Below are positions 3,653-63,775 of a DNA stretch of 64,000 bases, one piece after another (position 1 is the stretch's first letter; every line of letters begins with the position of its first letter). A program made the translations under genes and the position numbers. The notes under the pieces were generated by a model. It ran no database searches and was not told where the DNA came from. It was given only the letters and a program-made list of their open reading frames with translations. Location of the stretch: positions 2,790,001 through 2,854,000 of the forward strand of contig CM074813.1 in NCBI GenBank assembly GCA_037447605.1. Reading direction: 5' to 3'. The stretch is from Zygnema circumcarinatum SAG 698-1b (taxonomy: Eukaryota; Plantae; Zygnematophyceae).

Positions 3653-4174
3653 CTATGCACGAAATTTCCATTCTCGGCGGCACATAGGGCACTGGGGCCT
3701 CGGGCTCTGCGAGTTGACCCATTTGAGGATGCAGTGCAGGTGGAAGGCGTGGTTGCAGGCGCCCCAAACTGTGAAAGCACAAATGGTCACATAGAAACTC
3801 TCCGTTGCGTGAGCCAGCCGTTTGCACATAGACAGTTTTTGTTCAACAGTACATCACTCGCACGCTTAACAGAACTTCTAGAGGTGTTGTTCGCATTGGA
3901 TATGACGGGGGACAATGTTGAAGTTTAACATCAATCATGAGGGGTGGTGGAAGGCTCATACTGGGTTGGGACTTCAATAAGTCCTTCAGACATGCAAACA
4001 TTTCAAAGGTCCAAAAAGGTTTCAGAACCCAAATGCCCGGCTTGTATAGCCACCCAGACCTCGCAGTAACTTTTCGTCACGATCACAAAAGGGGGGGAAG
4101 CGAGAGGGAGCTGCTTGCTACACAAAACCAAGAACCTAAAGAGAGAAAGACACAGAGTGGGAGAGAGAGAGAGG

Positions 4175-4222
<48 letters not shown>

Positions 4223-5565
4223 AAGAGAGTGAGAGAGAGAGGAGAGATGCTCACTTAGAGGGCAATCATCTCCGGGCATTTTGCAGTCGGGGCAGCAGCC
4301 ATCGAAGGGCATTCGGCAGATCCCGCACGACTCGTCGTGGGCGTCCCACGTCCAAGCGGCGACCGCCCGCCAACTGCTCCAAGAGAGTGCCGCAGAGAGG
4401 GGGAGAGAGAGCAGCTTTGGGGACATCAACAAGAGCATGAAAGGACGCACAGAACTAACATTGGAGCAACATGGCGAGCAGTGCACACATCAACGTTGAG
4501 AACGGTCTCAGTGCGAGCCCCCATCATAGTGTGAACACCAGCTGCGCTTCCGGATTTAGGGTTTAGGGTTCGTTCGGACTTTCTAGGGTTCGTTTTAACT
4601 ACTTTATGGAAAGGAAAGTTAAAGACTTTTGCCATCAATGGTGCAAAGATTGACGCGTTAGTGGTCAAGAGGGTCTTGCTCTTTCAAAGTGATGCTGCTT
4701 TCCTTTTTTCAATGGAGCTTTTTAGTCTTAAGGGGAAGAAGTAAAGGATAAGTCTTGTGTTGGAGTGCGGCCTTTAGGGTTTGCGATTAAAGCTCGAACT
4801 TGGTTTGCATTTAAAGGTTTTGAGGGATGTTTTGTGATGCTTGAGGTAGGGTTTACGGAGTGGTGTCACTGCCAATCGAGTTTTTTCGTTTAAAAATTCA
4901 TAATTTATTTGAATTGTTTAGGGTTGCAAGAGAAGCCTGCTTTGAAGCTGTGCTTAGCGTTACTGTAGACATATTTACTGACCGAAAAAGAATTGCAATA
5001 TAAAGTGAATGATGAAACTTTATAAGCAGACAGAGACCGGCAGAGAAGCTGATGCTGCCTTTTCTGAAGATCACAAAATGGCCTAAAAAAAGGAAGAGAT
5101 CATTGGTTGGGTTCTTACTCTTTATTGGAAATGGAGGACGCCCCACAACCGCATCATAAGCCAAAAGTATCCACAACATAAAAAAAAACACGAGTTATAC
5201 TCTGATAAAATTTCTCCCCCCCCCCCCCCAAAAAAAGGGGTGAAATGAAATCTATAACATATTATATGTCACGCAATTCCAAAAACTCAGAAACCAGAAA
5301 CTTGAGAAACCTAACGCATCAGTTTTTTCAAGACTCCAAATTTTACTATGTATGAGGCTCGGGGGGGGAGGGGGGGTGGGCAGCAGGGCTATATAGCATA
5401 GCAGAGCGCAGCATAAATTCCAATCGAAATTAAAAAAAAAAAATCAAAAAGTTGTGAGATTCCCAGACGCTGAAATTCGATCGTGTTCCAATTTTTCCTT
5501 CCCTCTCCCCAGAAAAAAAATAATAATGAGAAGGGATTGAGCATACCTAAAATTTTCACTCGCAT
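3653..5565 (-). CDS. APC11: Anaphase-promoting complex subunit 11 (RING-H2 E3). Exons 5565-5547, a 1-nt exon (5201 or 5119; see findings), 4373-4255, 3768-3653; 84 aa
   Basis: MRVKIL(D)WRAVAAWTWDAHDESCGICRMPFDGCCPDCKMPGDDCPLIWGACNHAFHLHCILKWVNSQSPRPQCPMCRREWKFRA*, near-identical to plant APC11. 19+1+119+116=255 nt. Confidence 0.96.
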
Positions 5566-5623
5566 GGCGGCGACCTGCACCTGCTCCCTCACTTCAGAAA
5601 AAAACGACCCATTCCGGCAGTAA

Positions 5624-5877
5624 AGTACACTTGCCGTACGATAACCGACCGTCTGCCGTACATATAGTAGTGATCCGTTACAGTACCGTACAGTCTGGCC
5701 GGCTTTCGTACATTCTGGCCGCCTGCCGTACAATCTGGCCGACTGCCAGAAATTCAGAAAGGAAAAAACTGTGCGCTCAGCTCCGTTTGCGACACCAATT
5801 GAAGGCTAAAAGCACCATAATTTAGCCAATGGAGCTGTGTCACGTGCACACGTGCTTACGTGGCGAGTACCCATTGG
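5624..5877. promoter_or_regulatory. Bidirectional promoter APC11/SUVR3: GTAC cluster (5624-5747, including 3 x 20-bp tandem unit) and inverted CCAAT/CACG pair (5826-5877)
   Basis: 7 GTAC cores in ~110 bp; CCAAT-N10-CACGTG on + at 5826-5846; CCAAT-N9-CCACG on - at 5877-5859; the two divergent ATGs are 457 bp apart. Confidence 0.6.
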
Positions 5878-6022
5878 TAGACGCTCCGGGGTAATAGCTC
5901 TCAGTGAAAAGTGGCCGTGTGTCCTGTGATTTTCTTCTTTCTTTTCGTTTTTAGAAGAAAGCAGAAAGCCAGAGAGAGAGAGAGAAAGAGAGAGAGGCTC
6001 CTTCTTCCTCCCATTCTCAGCT

Positions 6023-10352
<4,330 letters not shown>

Positions 10353-28286: not shown

Positions 28287-30848
28287 CTATGGTCTGTATC
28301 GGAAAGTTCGGTCTTTGCGACTCCGCAGAAGCTGAATGAGAGCCTGTGCTCCTGTCCTCCCTCGCTGTGCGCCCAACGAGAGGCGGACAAGTGGCAGCAT
28401 CACGCCCTCAGATAGCATAGCCTCCCCTGCTCCTGGAACGTATGTGGCCAGAGCCAACAGGCATGTGGCAGCATCCTCCATAGCGCGCCTAGAAGCACCT
28501 TCCAAGACGTCCGCAAGGATAGCGACACCTCCCTCCTCATATATAGCCACTCGCCCTTCGCTTACTTGCGCAAGCTTCGCCAATACAGCCACAGCCTTTT
28601 CCTCTAAGTCCACATCCAAAGCGAGACCAAGCAGGACCTTTACAGCTCCCACAGAAACGATCTCCCTCGCAGAGCCGGGATCGAGGGATAAATTAAACAG
28701 AGCAAGAGCAGCATCTTTTTTACCTCTCAAAGAAGAAATTTTGAGCACCTTCACAAGGCGTCTAACGCCACCCGCCAACCGAATAAGCACACATGCATCC
28801 TTGCTTGAAGAGAGGCAAAAAAGGGACGCTGCAGCGTTTTCCGAAATGGGGCAGCTTTCGTGCTCAAGAAGGTCAACTAAAGCATCAATTCCGCCGACTG
28901 TTATCACCTCCTCTCGGCACTTCTCCCCACTAAGAGAGAGGTTTAAAATCGTTGTAACTGCATTCTCTATTATCTCCACATCGTTGTGCTGCAGGAGAGC
29001 AACGAGAGGTTCAATCCCTCCTGCAGCAATAACTCTCATCTTGTTCTTCGGTTGATTCTTCACAAGATTCCGAAGTCTCCGAAGGGCTAATTTCCTCACC
29101 TCTCCTTTACTTTCTTGAATTGCGTCAACCAAACCTGAAATAATCTCCGCTTCATCTCCACCAAATACGACCCCTTCCCTTTCGGCAATATAGGGCTCTG
29201 CCTCCCCATTTGATGGCATAGAAACTGCTCTTGCAAGTGAAAAAGACCCATCTTTTGACATAGGCAGAGACAATGTTCTCACAAGCCCGGGTGATCTCCT
29301 TTTCTGAACTTCCGACAACTTCAACAGACAGTAAGCAGCATCTTCTTTTGCCCGAGCTGAACCTCTTTCTAAAACCTTCTGTAAAACAGAAGCTGCTTCC
29401 TTCTCATAGAGAGCGGCACAACCCTCACTCATACGACACAAATTACGCAAAGTTGCAGTAACTTTCTCCTCAAGAGCAGGATCAAGAGCCAAGCTTAGAA
29501 GCACATCTACTGCCCCTTCGTAAACTATGTCACCTGCACACACACCTTCTGCAGAAAGATTCATAAGCACTGTAGCTGCATCTTTCTTGCCCCTCAGAGA
29601 CCCCTCCTCCAACATAACAATTAGAGGTTTAATCGCTCCCGCAACCCAAATTAGGGTTTTGGCTTCCTCATCATGGCAGAGAGTGACCAGCACTGAAGTC
29701 GCTGCTTCAACAAGTGACGGCTGCTTCCCTCTCTCCATCACTTGCACCAAATTTTTGATCCCACCTGCACCCAAAATTTGGGATTGGCAGTTCTCTGTGA
29801 GAGCTAAGTTGAGAAGTGTCACGACTGCGTCCTCCACAATGCTGACGTCAGCTGACTTCAGCAATGCTACCAGTGGGGGTATCCCTCCTGCTTTCACTAC
29901 TTCGAATTTTTTCTCCGGAAGGTCCTTTACAACTTCCCGTAGAATATGAACAGCGGTTTTTTTCGACTCAGCATTATACTCCTGCAAGTTTTGCACAAGC
30001 ACAGCGATCATGTTGTCTCCTGCCACATCCCAAACTGTGGAAGAAGCTGAACTAGTCCCGGCTAAGTTCACACCACTCGATACTCTCGATTCAACTTCGC
30101 CGGAAGAAAATAGACTATCAGTCAAAGGATCGTCTATCCCAAATTCGCTGAACTCATCTGCTCCCCAAGAGAGAGTCCGCCCCCTTCTCGCTGTTGCATC
30201 ACTGTACTTAGAAAAAGTTGCAGTTTCAGTTACTCCACTGGCTGCTTTAAGAGTTACATCTGAATTTTCCACATTTGCCATTTCTTTCTTGAGTTGTCTG
30301 CTCAAATCCTGGTCGTTAAGTGTTCGACTCCTCGTTAAAAACCCTCCCCCTACTGCACAGCCCCCAATTCCCTGTAAGCGTCCCTCTACAACTACACCTG
30401 CTTTCCGGCGATTAGCAGGGGGCATCTTACTGCGACTGCAAGGAGAGGAGGAATTCATGTGTCTCATATTCTCCTCTGTATGAACGAAATTTGAAGGCCA
30501 AATGGGGCAAACTGGGCTTTTAGGTGCGAGCCTTATAGTGCTTTCGGAGGACTCGAACTCCCAAGAATTACTGCTCCCATTGCCGCCGTAACTGCTTTTG
30601 CTTTCCAACAAAGTGGAGCGCTTCTCGGATATTTTGGTGCTTTTTGACTTCTCCTGGCCACCCCAAAGAGGCGAACTTGGCCACCTCAGCGCTCTCTTAA
30701 GCTGCCACGTGGCTCCGCCTGCATCGACAGTTGACGTGGGGCTGATCGTCGGACTCGGAGTGCTTTCTGATGACGCACTCGTTCCACGTCGCGAGTCTCG
30801 AGGTCCACCTCCAACTCCCGCCCAATAATTTTCCGCTAGCTGCGACAT
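28287..30848 (-). CDS. Intronless armadillo-repeat protein with two tandem PUB-type ARM domains and no recognisable U-box; 853 aa
   Basis: Single long ORF; motifs AGGIPPLVALL...AVVTLLNL, GSLRGKKDAA and LEEK each occur twice; Ser-rich disordered N-terminus (~275 aa). Confidence 0.9.
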   Translation of the reverse strand: MSQLAENYWAGVGGGPRDSRRGTSASSESTPSPTISPTSTVDAGGATWQLKRALRWPSSPLWGGQEKSKSTKISEKRSTLLESKSSYGGNGSSNSWEFESSESTIRLAPKSPVCPIWPSNFVHTEENMRHMNSSSPCSRSKMPPANRRKAGVVVEGRLQGIGGCAVGGGFLTRSRTLNDQDLSRQLKKEMANVENSDVTLKAASGVTETATFSKYSDATARRGRTLSWGADEFSEFGIDDPLTDSLFSSGEVESRVSSGVNLAGTSSASSTVWDVAGDNMIAVLVQNLQEYNAESKKTAVHILREVVKDLPEKKFEVVKAGGIPPLVALLKSADVSIVEDAVVTLLNLALTENCQSQILGAGGIKNLVQVMERGKQPSLVEAATSVLVTLCHDEEAKTLIWVAGAIKPLIVMLEEGSLRGKKDAATVLMNLSAEGVCAGDIVYEGAVDVLLSLALDPALEEKVTATLRNLCRMSEGCAALYEKEAASVLQKVLERGSARAKEDAAYCLLKLSEVQKRRSPGLVRTLSLPMSKDGSFSLARAVSMPSNGEAEPYIAEREGVVFGGDEAEIISGLVDAIQESKGEVRKLALRRLRNLVKNQPKNKMRVIAAGGIEPLVALLQHNDVEIIENAVTTILNLSLSGEKCREEVITVGGIDALVDLLEHESCPISENAAASLFCLSSSKDACVLIRLAGGVRRLVKVLKISSLRGKKDAALALFNLSLDPGSAREIVSVGAVKVLLGLALDVDLEEKAVAVLAKLAQVSEGRVAIYEEGGVAILADVLEGASRRAMEDAATCLLALATYVPGAGEAMLSEGVMLPLVRLSLGAQRGRTGAQALIQLLRSRKDRTFRYRP

Positions 30849-60385: not shown

Positions 60386-63775
<3,390 letters not shown>

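What the first reader, a model, noticed from the sequence alone, without database searches (positions are those of the whole stretch)
4374..5546. APC11 requires a single-nucleotide exon, and there are two candidate AG|A|GT sites 82 nt apart
Seen: exon 1 (ATG CGA GTG AAA ATT TTA G|GTATGC) ends in phase 1, but both usable acceptors before the WRAVAAW exon (CAG|T TGG at 4373; GAG|C AGT TGG) are phase 2, so direct splicing frameshifts the RING domain. Adding exactly 1 nt gives 255 nt = 84 aa, the canonical plant APC11 length, with one residue between KIL and W. Scanning the interval by eye for AG-N-GT on the minus strand gave three sites: 5201 (ttttatCAG|A|GTATAA), 5119 (aatAAAG|A|GTAAGA) and a weaker 5469 (tttCAG|C|GTCTGG). 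The A sites give G+A+T = Asp. Established: a constitutive single-A exon has been described at this position in Arabidopsis APC11. Inference: the 1-nt exon may be ancient, possibly predating land plants if this is an alga. Including both A sites (81-nt GT..AG intron between them) would frameshift the mRNA, a possible 1-nt NMD rheostat on a cell-cycle E3.
Basis: partly seen in the sequence, partly recalled or inferred. Interest (0 to 1): 0.88.

Follow-up and report, generated by a model that had tools for sequence, protein, structure and literature searches.

The report
Ancient one-letter exon in APC11
This alga's gene for the cell-cycle enzyme APC11 contains an exon of a single A, which RNA places at one of two candidate sites; the trick is known from land plants, but comparison suggests that land plants splice it between two different splicing machines and that the same one-letter exon also exists in animals.

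Summary
Confirmed: APC11 (minus strand) needs +1 nt between exon 1 and exon 3. RNA contigs from two studies show both flanking introns spliced at A5119. No joint was seen at 5201 or 5469, and the fully mature junction was not seen as one contig. The two-A 'NMD rheostat' is not supported. The exon is known from Arabidopsis and land plants, and was already predicted in Zygnema and Mesostigma (PMC11096116 source data). Two points were not found in the literature searched. (1) In all 24 land-plant loci with both introns, the upstream intron starts GTATCC and nearly always has a U12-type branch motif 39-49 nt upstream, so the exon sits between a minor-type and a major-type intron. This alga has GTATGC after exonic AG, which looks major-type. 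(2) Four non-plant loci (anthozoan-like, mollusc-like, two unplaced) show the same phase-1 donor, phase-2 acceptor and a fitting AG-N-GT site, so the exon may predate the plant-animal split. Both points rest on sequence only. The scan has no earlier APC11 note; it noted a similar major/minor sandwich in this genome's FHIT gene (s1-393347, untested here).

The parts
5547..5565 (-). APC11 coding exon 1, 19 nt (MRVKIL plus the first base of codon 7); ends in exonic AG
   Evidence: covered without mismatch by RNA contigs of run X2
5120..5546 (-). Intron 1, 427 nt, GT-AG; donor GTATGCTC, acceptor AAG; orthologous to the U12-type intron of land plants but major-like here
   Evidence: joint 5119-5547, skips 427, in X2; of three equivalent cuts only this one has GT-AG ends; comparison
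5119..5119 (-). The 1-nt exon (A), middle base of codon 7 (G+A+T = Asp)
   Evidence: both flanking joints seen at this base, in different studies
4374..5118 (-). Intron 2, 745 nt, GT-AG; strong U2-type donor GTAAGA, acceptor CAG
   Evidence: joint 4373-5119, skips 745, in X6
4255..4373 (-). Exon 3, 119 nt, residues 8-46 of APC11
   Evidence: Pfam zf-ANAPC11; aligns to residues 8-46 of the 84-aa APC11 chain in PDB 5g04_B
3769..4254 (-). Intron 3 (phase 1 in codon 47); position shared with all intron-bearing orthologues examined
   Evidence: loose ends at 4255 in X2, X3, X6 are the start of exon 4
3653..3768 (-). Exon 4, coding part to the stop codon
5201..5201 (-). Second AG-A-GT site; no use detected, probably a chance site inside intron 1
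5469..5469 (-). AG-C-GT site; no use detected
5129..5162 (-). Candidate branch-point region of intron 1: CTTAT/ATGAT with A 38/35 nt upstream of the exon (in register with the land-plant motif), or TCCTCCAT with A 13 nt upstream
   Evidence: sequence inspection only; not tested

Best explanation
A5119 is the constitutive 1-nt exon of an ordinary, intact 84-aa APC11 (the RING subunit of APC/C). Shown: both flanking introns are spliced at this base, and intermediates of both orders exist (intron 1 out first in X2, intron 2 out first in X6), so the introns are removed one after the other. Inferred: the exon is marked by a strong U1 donor right after the A plus a branch point set about 35-45 nt back. 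In land plants the upstream intron is minor (U12)-type and the downstream one major (U2)-type, so skipping the base would need a hybrid splice that is generally disfavoured. In this alga the upstream donor looks major-type (+5 G, exonic AG), so fidelity rests on ordinary site strength. The second site (5201) is a chance look-alike. [quoted passage not shown]
For: Frame logic. RNA joints at 5119 on both sides and none at 5201/5469. The same rule (best U1 match among AG-N-GT sites) recovers the validated Arabidopsis A333 and picks 5119 here. 24 of 24 land-plant loci with both introns have a GTATCC donor (16 with full GTATCCTT; background 0.5% of GT) and 23 have CTTRAY 39-49 nt upstream (background about 2% at 37-46 nt). 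Two angiosperm loci also use an AAG acceptor. Literature: +5 C-to-G converts U12 to U2 (PMC2831892); exonic AG at -2/-1 blocks minor splicing (PMC11347168); U12/U2 incompatibility makes exon skipping rare (PMC3584512). Klebsormidium, Ceratodon and Ceratopteris keep only the phase-2 intron.
Against: The mature exon1-A-exon3 junction was not seen as one contig. Contigs drop rare variants, and the tool skipped the repeat at 5204-5246 next to 5201, so low-level use of 5201 is not excluded. Intron class is read from sequence only. The land-plant branch motif lies about 40 nt from the 3' end, whereas U12 introns prefer 11-13 nt, so the intron could be a hybrid. Hybrid U2-donor/U12-acceptor skipping does occur when the minor spliceosome is impaired. 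The 24 loci are related species, not independent events.
Confidence: 0.85

Rival explanations
1. Two-site rheostat: 5201 and 5119 are both used, and including both A's frameshifts the mRNA and lowers APC11.
For: Both sites have AG-A-GT-A (P=0.006 for two, post hoc); 81-nt GT..AG spacer; contigs cannot show rare isoforms.
Against: No joint at 5201 in four runs; the X2 splice jumps over it and X3 and X6 read through it. Weak donor and a G-run instead of pyrimidines. Extra sites in orthologues are not conserved, e.g. present in M. paleacea but not M. polymorpha. The stop would lie only 11 nt before the last coding junction.
Confidence: 0.06
2. Regulation by detained introns: the introns around the 1-nt exon are slow to splice, so retention limits APC11 output (retained forms hit stops after 7 or 58 codons).
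For: Partly spliced contigs of both kinds occur in which intron 3 is already removed, and intron 2 is covered in all four runs.
Against: Contig depth cannot give isoform levels, and a contig may merge different molecules. Intermediates are expected from sequential splicing alone. No condition dependence was tested.
Confidence: 0.25
3. Intron 1 of this alga is still spliced by the minor spliceosome (degenerate donor, branch TCCTCCAT 13 nt from a weak AAG acceptor).
For: Only 2 mismatches to GTATCCTT; U12-like motif at the optimal U12 distance; other scan notes report AT-AC introns in this genome (unchecked).
Against: +5 G and exonic AG are the hallmarks of major-spliceosome use; Closterium has a plain U2 donor at this intron.
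Confidence: 0.2
4. The non-plant cases are not 1-nt exons but non-canonical splices shifted by one base (which always supply a G), or parallel intron gains.
For: Three of four non-plant candidates are G, which a shifted junction would mimic; no RNA was available for them; shuffle P values for three are modest (0.03-0.075).
Against: L092 has a single site, CAG-A-GTGAGT (P=0.001); L077 has a perfect CAG-G-GTAAGT giving the Ser seen in Octopus; L080's 37/35-nt introns fit its roughly 43-nt third intron; all three intron positions coincide with plants.
Confidence: 0.15

Closest known systems
Arabidopsis APC11 (At3g05870) single-nucleotide exon A333 (Guo and Liu 2015, PMC4674806)
   Same: Same gene, same codon 7, 19-nt first exon, single A, two GT-AG introns; the paper's branch A 44 nt upstream is the motif conserved here across land plants.
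   Different: Codon is Asp rather than Gln; introns are 427/745 nt rather than 332/89; the donor is GTATGC after exonic AG rather than GTATCCTT. The paper does not discuss U12 class in the parts read.
Plant microexon cluster 1, zf-ANAPC11 (Yu et al. 2022, PMC8831610; MEPDB, PMC12409088)
   Same: Size 1, phase 1, first block 19 nt; conserved in land plants, lost with the introns in most monocots.
   Different: Listed as 'land plants'; the text has no mention of U12 or the minor spliceosome; no animal or other non-plant case.
MEPmodeler predictions in streptophyte algae (Feng et al. 2024, PMC11096116, Fig. 6a source data)
   Same: [quoted passage not shown] This window may be that very Zygnema locus.
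   Different: Prediction only for APC11; the RNA example shown was the VPS55 1-bp exon. No site choice, intron class or wider ancestry was discussed.
Fusarium CYP621A one-nucleotide exon (Nelson and Syed 2026, PMC12940212)
   Same: Phase-1 donor and phase-2 acceptor reconciled by one base.
   Different: Unrelated gene in one fungal genus. The authors call it the second known case, which suggests non-plant APC11 cases are unreported.
Mixed U12/U2 architectures (JNK hybrid introns, twintrons; PMC3584512, PMC8329584)
   Same: Incompatibility of the two spliceosomes constrains which sites can be joined.
   Different: Those involve full-size exons or nested introns; here the two machines would meet across one base.

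Membership tests
APC11 1-nt microexon (cluster 1) | Host gene is APC11 | tested here: met
APC11 1-nt microexon (cluster 1) | 19-nt first coding exon, 1-nt exon in phase 1 at codon 7 | tested here: met
APC11 1-nt microexon (cluster 1) | Both flanking GT-AG introns spliced at the same base | tested here: met
   joints 5119-5547 (X2) and 4373-5119 (X6)
APC11 1-nt microexon (cluster 1) | Constitutive inclusion in mature mRNA | tested here: inconclusive
   mature junction not listed among contigs; no skip joint seen either
U12-type intron (this window's intron 1) | 5' site RTATCCTT without exonic AG | tested here: not met
   AG then GTATGCTC
U12-type intron (this window's intron 1) | TCCTTRAY branch about 11-13 nt from the 3' site | tested here: inconclusive
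   TCCTCCAT at -13, two mismatches
U12-type intron (this window's intron 1) | Dependence on U11/U12/U6atac | not testable with these tools
   needs knock-down or lariat data
U12-type intron (land-plant orthologues) | 5' site GTATCC(TT) | tested here: met
   24/24 GTATCC, 16 full GTATCCTT
U12-type intron (land-plant orthologues) | U12-type branch motif at short distance from the 3' site | tested here: inconclusive
   motif present in 23/24 but at 39-49 nt; Sphagnum also has one at 17 nt
U12-type intron (land-plant orthologues) | Retention in minor-spliceosome mutants | not testable with these tools
   no reads call left
Poison-exon / NMD switch | Alternative inclusion seen in RNA | tested here: not met
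   no joint at 5201 in four runs; rare use not excluded
Poison-exon / NMD switch | Premature stop more than about 50 nt before an exon junction | tested here: not met
   11 nt before the last coding junction; 3' UTR introns not examined
Poison-exon / NMD switch | Conservation of the second site | tested here: not met

The most novel reading that the evidence does not exclude
The APC11 1-nt exon dates from the common ancestor of plants and animals and survives in anthozoans, molluscs and other eukaryotes. In land plants it lies between a minor and a major intron, so the two spliceosomes act across a single base and their incompatibility prevents skipping; this alga shows that intron after a switch to the major class.
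Probability: 0.6. Interest if true: 0.8.

Novelty: new variant of a known kind. Interest (0 to 1): 0.6.

Why it matters
The exon itself is known, and this locus adds RNA support in an alga. The wider pattern would answer the question left open by Guo and Liu, how one base is spliced faithfully: sequentially, with a set-back branch point and, in land plants, a minor/major pairing that blocks skipping. It would make an essential cell-cycle ligase a previously unlisted minor-intron gene in plants, missed because annotations omit the exon. It would give a nuclear 1-nt exon in animals (none found in the papers searched) and possibly one of the oldest microexons known. Loss of one or the other flanking intron would look like 1-nt intron sliding. 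It also explains wrong APC11 N-termini in databases: 240 of 316 retrieved proteins, a set biased towards outliers, including the Nematostella RefSeq model.

Tried and rejected
Direct splicing to either AG of the tandem acceptor, or to any other AG: frameshift or stop. A GC donor 4 nt into intron 1 gives an open 85-aa frame but is non-consensus, and RNA shows the GT donor. Longer 3n+1 cassette exons (37 open-frame options) would add residues, whereas intact homologues have seven residues before W8. Assembly indel in exon 1 or 3: excluded. Non-coding RNA in the introns: no Rfam match at E<=1. Naming the species failed: the ARM-repeat neighbour has no close named relative. Taxonomy of L080 and L093 could not be fixed. 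Loci for Amborella and Diphasiastrum were not on record. Run X1 gave only intron 2 sequence. The joined spliced model was not sent to any search tool; exons were searched separately by reference, and joined translations were made only inside scripts. Mammal-like protein entries (P0143, P0149) were left out of alignments and trees; no fetched contig looked human.

Full report
Observation. On the minus strand the gene has coding exons at 5565-5547 (19 nt), 4373-4255 (119 nt) and 3768-3653 (116 nt). They sum to 254 nt, and one extra base gives an 84-residue protein. Exons 3 and 4, searched separately by reference, match Pfam zf-ANAPC11, and exon 3 aligns to residues 8-46 of the 84-aa APC11 chain in PDB. 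The number of candidates therefore says nothing in itself.

Which base is used. Contigs of four public runs from four studies were laid on 4245-5930. Three of them continue from 4255 into the start of exon 4, so they are spliced RNA. Run X2 holds a joint 5119-5547 (427 nt skipped, GT-AG) with intron 2 kept. Run X6 holds a joint 4373-5119 (745 nt skipped, GT-AG) with intron 1 kept. Of the three equivalent cuts of the X2 joint only the one at 5119 has canonical ends. No joint was seen at 5201 or 5469: X2 splices across 5201, and X3 and X6 read through it. Exons 1 and 3 carry no differing letter. The exon is therefore A5119, codon 7 is Asp, and both orders of intron removal occur. Limits: contigs drop rare forms and can merge molecules, the repeat at 5204-5246 was skipped, and the mature junction was not listed (exon 1 with its short leader would be a short tip in an assembly graph; this is my inference).

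The rheostat idea. The 5201 donor matches U1 at 3 of 6 positions against 5 of 6 for 5119, and it is preceded by a G-run. The two-A message would stop 11 nt before the last coding junction, too close for junction-dependent NMD by the usual rule (own knowledge). Extra AG-N-GT sites in orthologues are scattered and not conserved. I give it about 6%.

Organism. Exons 3 and 4 group with streptophytes (96/83), next to Closterium and Selaginella with weak support; earlier scan notes call the genome Closterium-like (unchecked). About 1177 windows on 71 pieces, rich simple repeats, and 2017 runs with the same species label that share no words would fit Zygnema circumcarinatum (71 Mb; strain SAG 698-1a is now regarded as another species). 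This is a guess, perhaps 60%.

What is known. The single A was proven in Arabidopsis by mutagenesis (PMC4674806) and catalogued across land plants as cluster 1 (PMC8831610). The source data of the Zygnema genome paper already score it present in Z. circumcarinatum SAG 698-1b, UTEX 1559 and Mesostigma, and merged in Chara and Klebsormidium (PMC11096116). 'Older than land plants' is thus not new as a prediction.

Intron class. I fetched orthologous loci. In A. thaliana the only AG-N-GT site is the published A333, which validates the method. In all 24 land-plant loci with both introns (Marchantia, Sphagnum and another moss-like locus, Selaginella, many angiosperms), intron 1 starts GTATCC, 16 with the full GTATCCTT, against 0.5% of GT dinucleotides. 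Twenty-three carry CTTRAY with the A 39-49 nt before the exon, against about 2% of control YAG sites at 37-46 nt. Intron 2 always has a U2-type donor, and the best candidate base is always A. These are the U12 consensus elements (PMC2831892), although the branch distance is much longer than the 11-13 nt optimum (PMC3584512). The window has GTATGCTC after exonic AG. A +5 C-to-G change is the classic route from U12 to U2, and exonic AG prevents minor splicing (PMC11347168), so intron 1 is probably major-type here. Closterium NIES-64 has a U2 donor and a predicted 1-nt G exon, yet keeps TCCTCGAC at -37. Klebsormidium, Ceratodon and Ceratopteris have a 20-nt first exon and only the phase-2 intron. 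Direction is not settled: conversion normally runs from U12 to U2, but the non-plant donors below are U2-type, so a U12 state gained in land plants is not excluded. Searches for a U12 link to APC11 found nothing.

Beyond plants. In the metagenome scan many loci have no intron before W8. All four non-plant loci that have one and include exon 1 show a GT donor after nt 19 and an AG acceptor before nt 21, so they too lack one base, and they share the third intron in codon 47. L092 is sister to Nematostella (97/88) and has a single site, CAG-A-GTGAGT (Gln7; shuffle P=0.001). L077 lies close to Octopus and has CAG-G-GTAAGT (Ser7 as in Octopus; P=0.036). L080 (introns of 37 and 35 nt, P=0.033) and L093 (92 and 92 nt, P=0.075) are unplaced. 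Many animal-like read-through ORFs end in Arg or Ser before W8, the mark of a phase-2 acceptor, and the Nematostella RefSeq model has a wrong N-terminus. No RNA check was possible, and three of the four bases are G, which a shifted non-canonical junction would mimic. A 2026 paper calls a Fusarium case the second 1-nt exon known, and searches found no animal APC11 case; the library is incomplete.

Mechanism. Shown: use of A5119, sequential removal in both orders, intact 84-aa frame. Inferred: recognition through a strong downstream U1 site plus a set-back branch point; in land plants a U12/U2 pairing that makes skipping a disfavoured hybrid splice (exceptions exist); in this alga two major introns. 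Retained-intron forms stop early and might limit output, but contigs cannot measure that.

Verdict. The feature is real and the site is resolved; the rheostat is unlikely. The locus is a member of the known APC11 1-nt exon family and may already have been predicted in this genome. The difference in intron class and the non-plant occurrences appear unreported and rest on sequence comparison. Interest 0.6. The joined spliced model was not submitted to any search tool.

Noticed in passing
window 4557-4925: Six telo-box motifs (AACCCTA, minus strand) in intron 2 against 0.6 expected from the window average. Run X1 holds only this stretch (4522-4975), and an in-frame ATG at 4438 could give a 99-aa APC11 with another N-terminus. 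Possible intronic promoter.
   Followed up: partly
window 5566-6022: APC11 and a Pre-SET/SET-domain gene (ATG at 6023) are head to head about 460 bp apart; probably a shared promoter.
   Followed up: no
window about 7100-9800 and 61950-63200: CT-repeat runs of about 2.7 kb and 1.2 kb inside introns; may be real or assembly-inflated.
   Followed up: no
window 5361-5399: 39 nt of intron 1 match a different, abundant contig in run X1 (depth 129, one mismatch); a short dispersed repeat.
   Followed up: no
window 4880 and 5179: Run X6 has one extra base in each of two homopolymer runs: strain difference or assembly slip; it would make the spacer between the two A sites 82 nt.
   Followed up: no
L001 3920-4560: Closterium NIES-64 APC11 has a degenerate duplicate of the exon 3 acceptor and three further partial copies of the 3' half of exon 3 with its donor; the GenBank model has a wrong N-terminus.
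   Followed up: no
L012 1001-84907: Ceratopteris APC11 spans 84 kb, with a first intron of about 63 kb.
   Followed up: no
L080 1330-1345: A second GTATCCTTG (U12-like donor) lies 4 nt inside the 37-nt first intron of this unplaced eukaryote.
   Followed up: no
protein P0305: UniRef entry labelled Salmonella sp. clusters with cnidarian APC11 proteins; probably contamination.
   Followed up: no
PMC8831610 supplement, cluster 2: The VPS55 1-nt exon also follows a 19-nt first block; worth checking whether one of its introns is U12-type.
   Followed up: no
window 28287-30848: Single-exon 853-aa ARM-repeat ORF of plant U-box ARM type with no U-box hit in Pfam and no close relative.
   Followed up: partly
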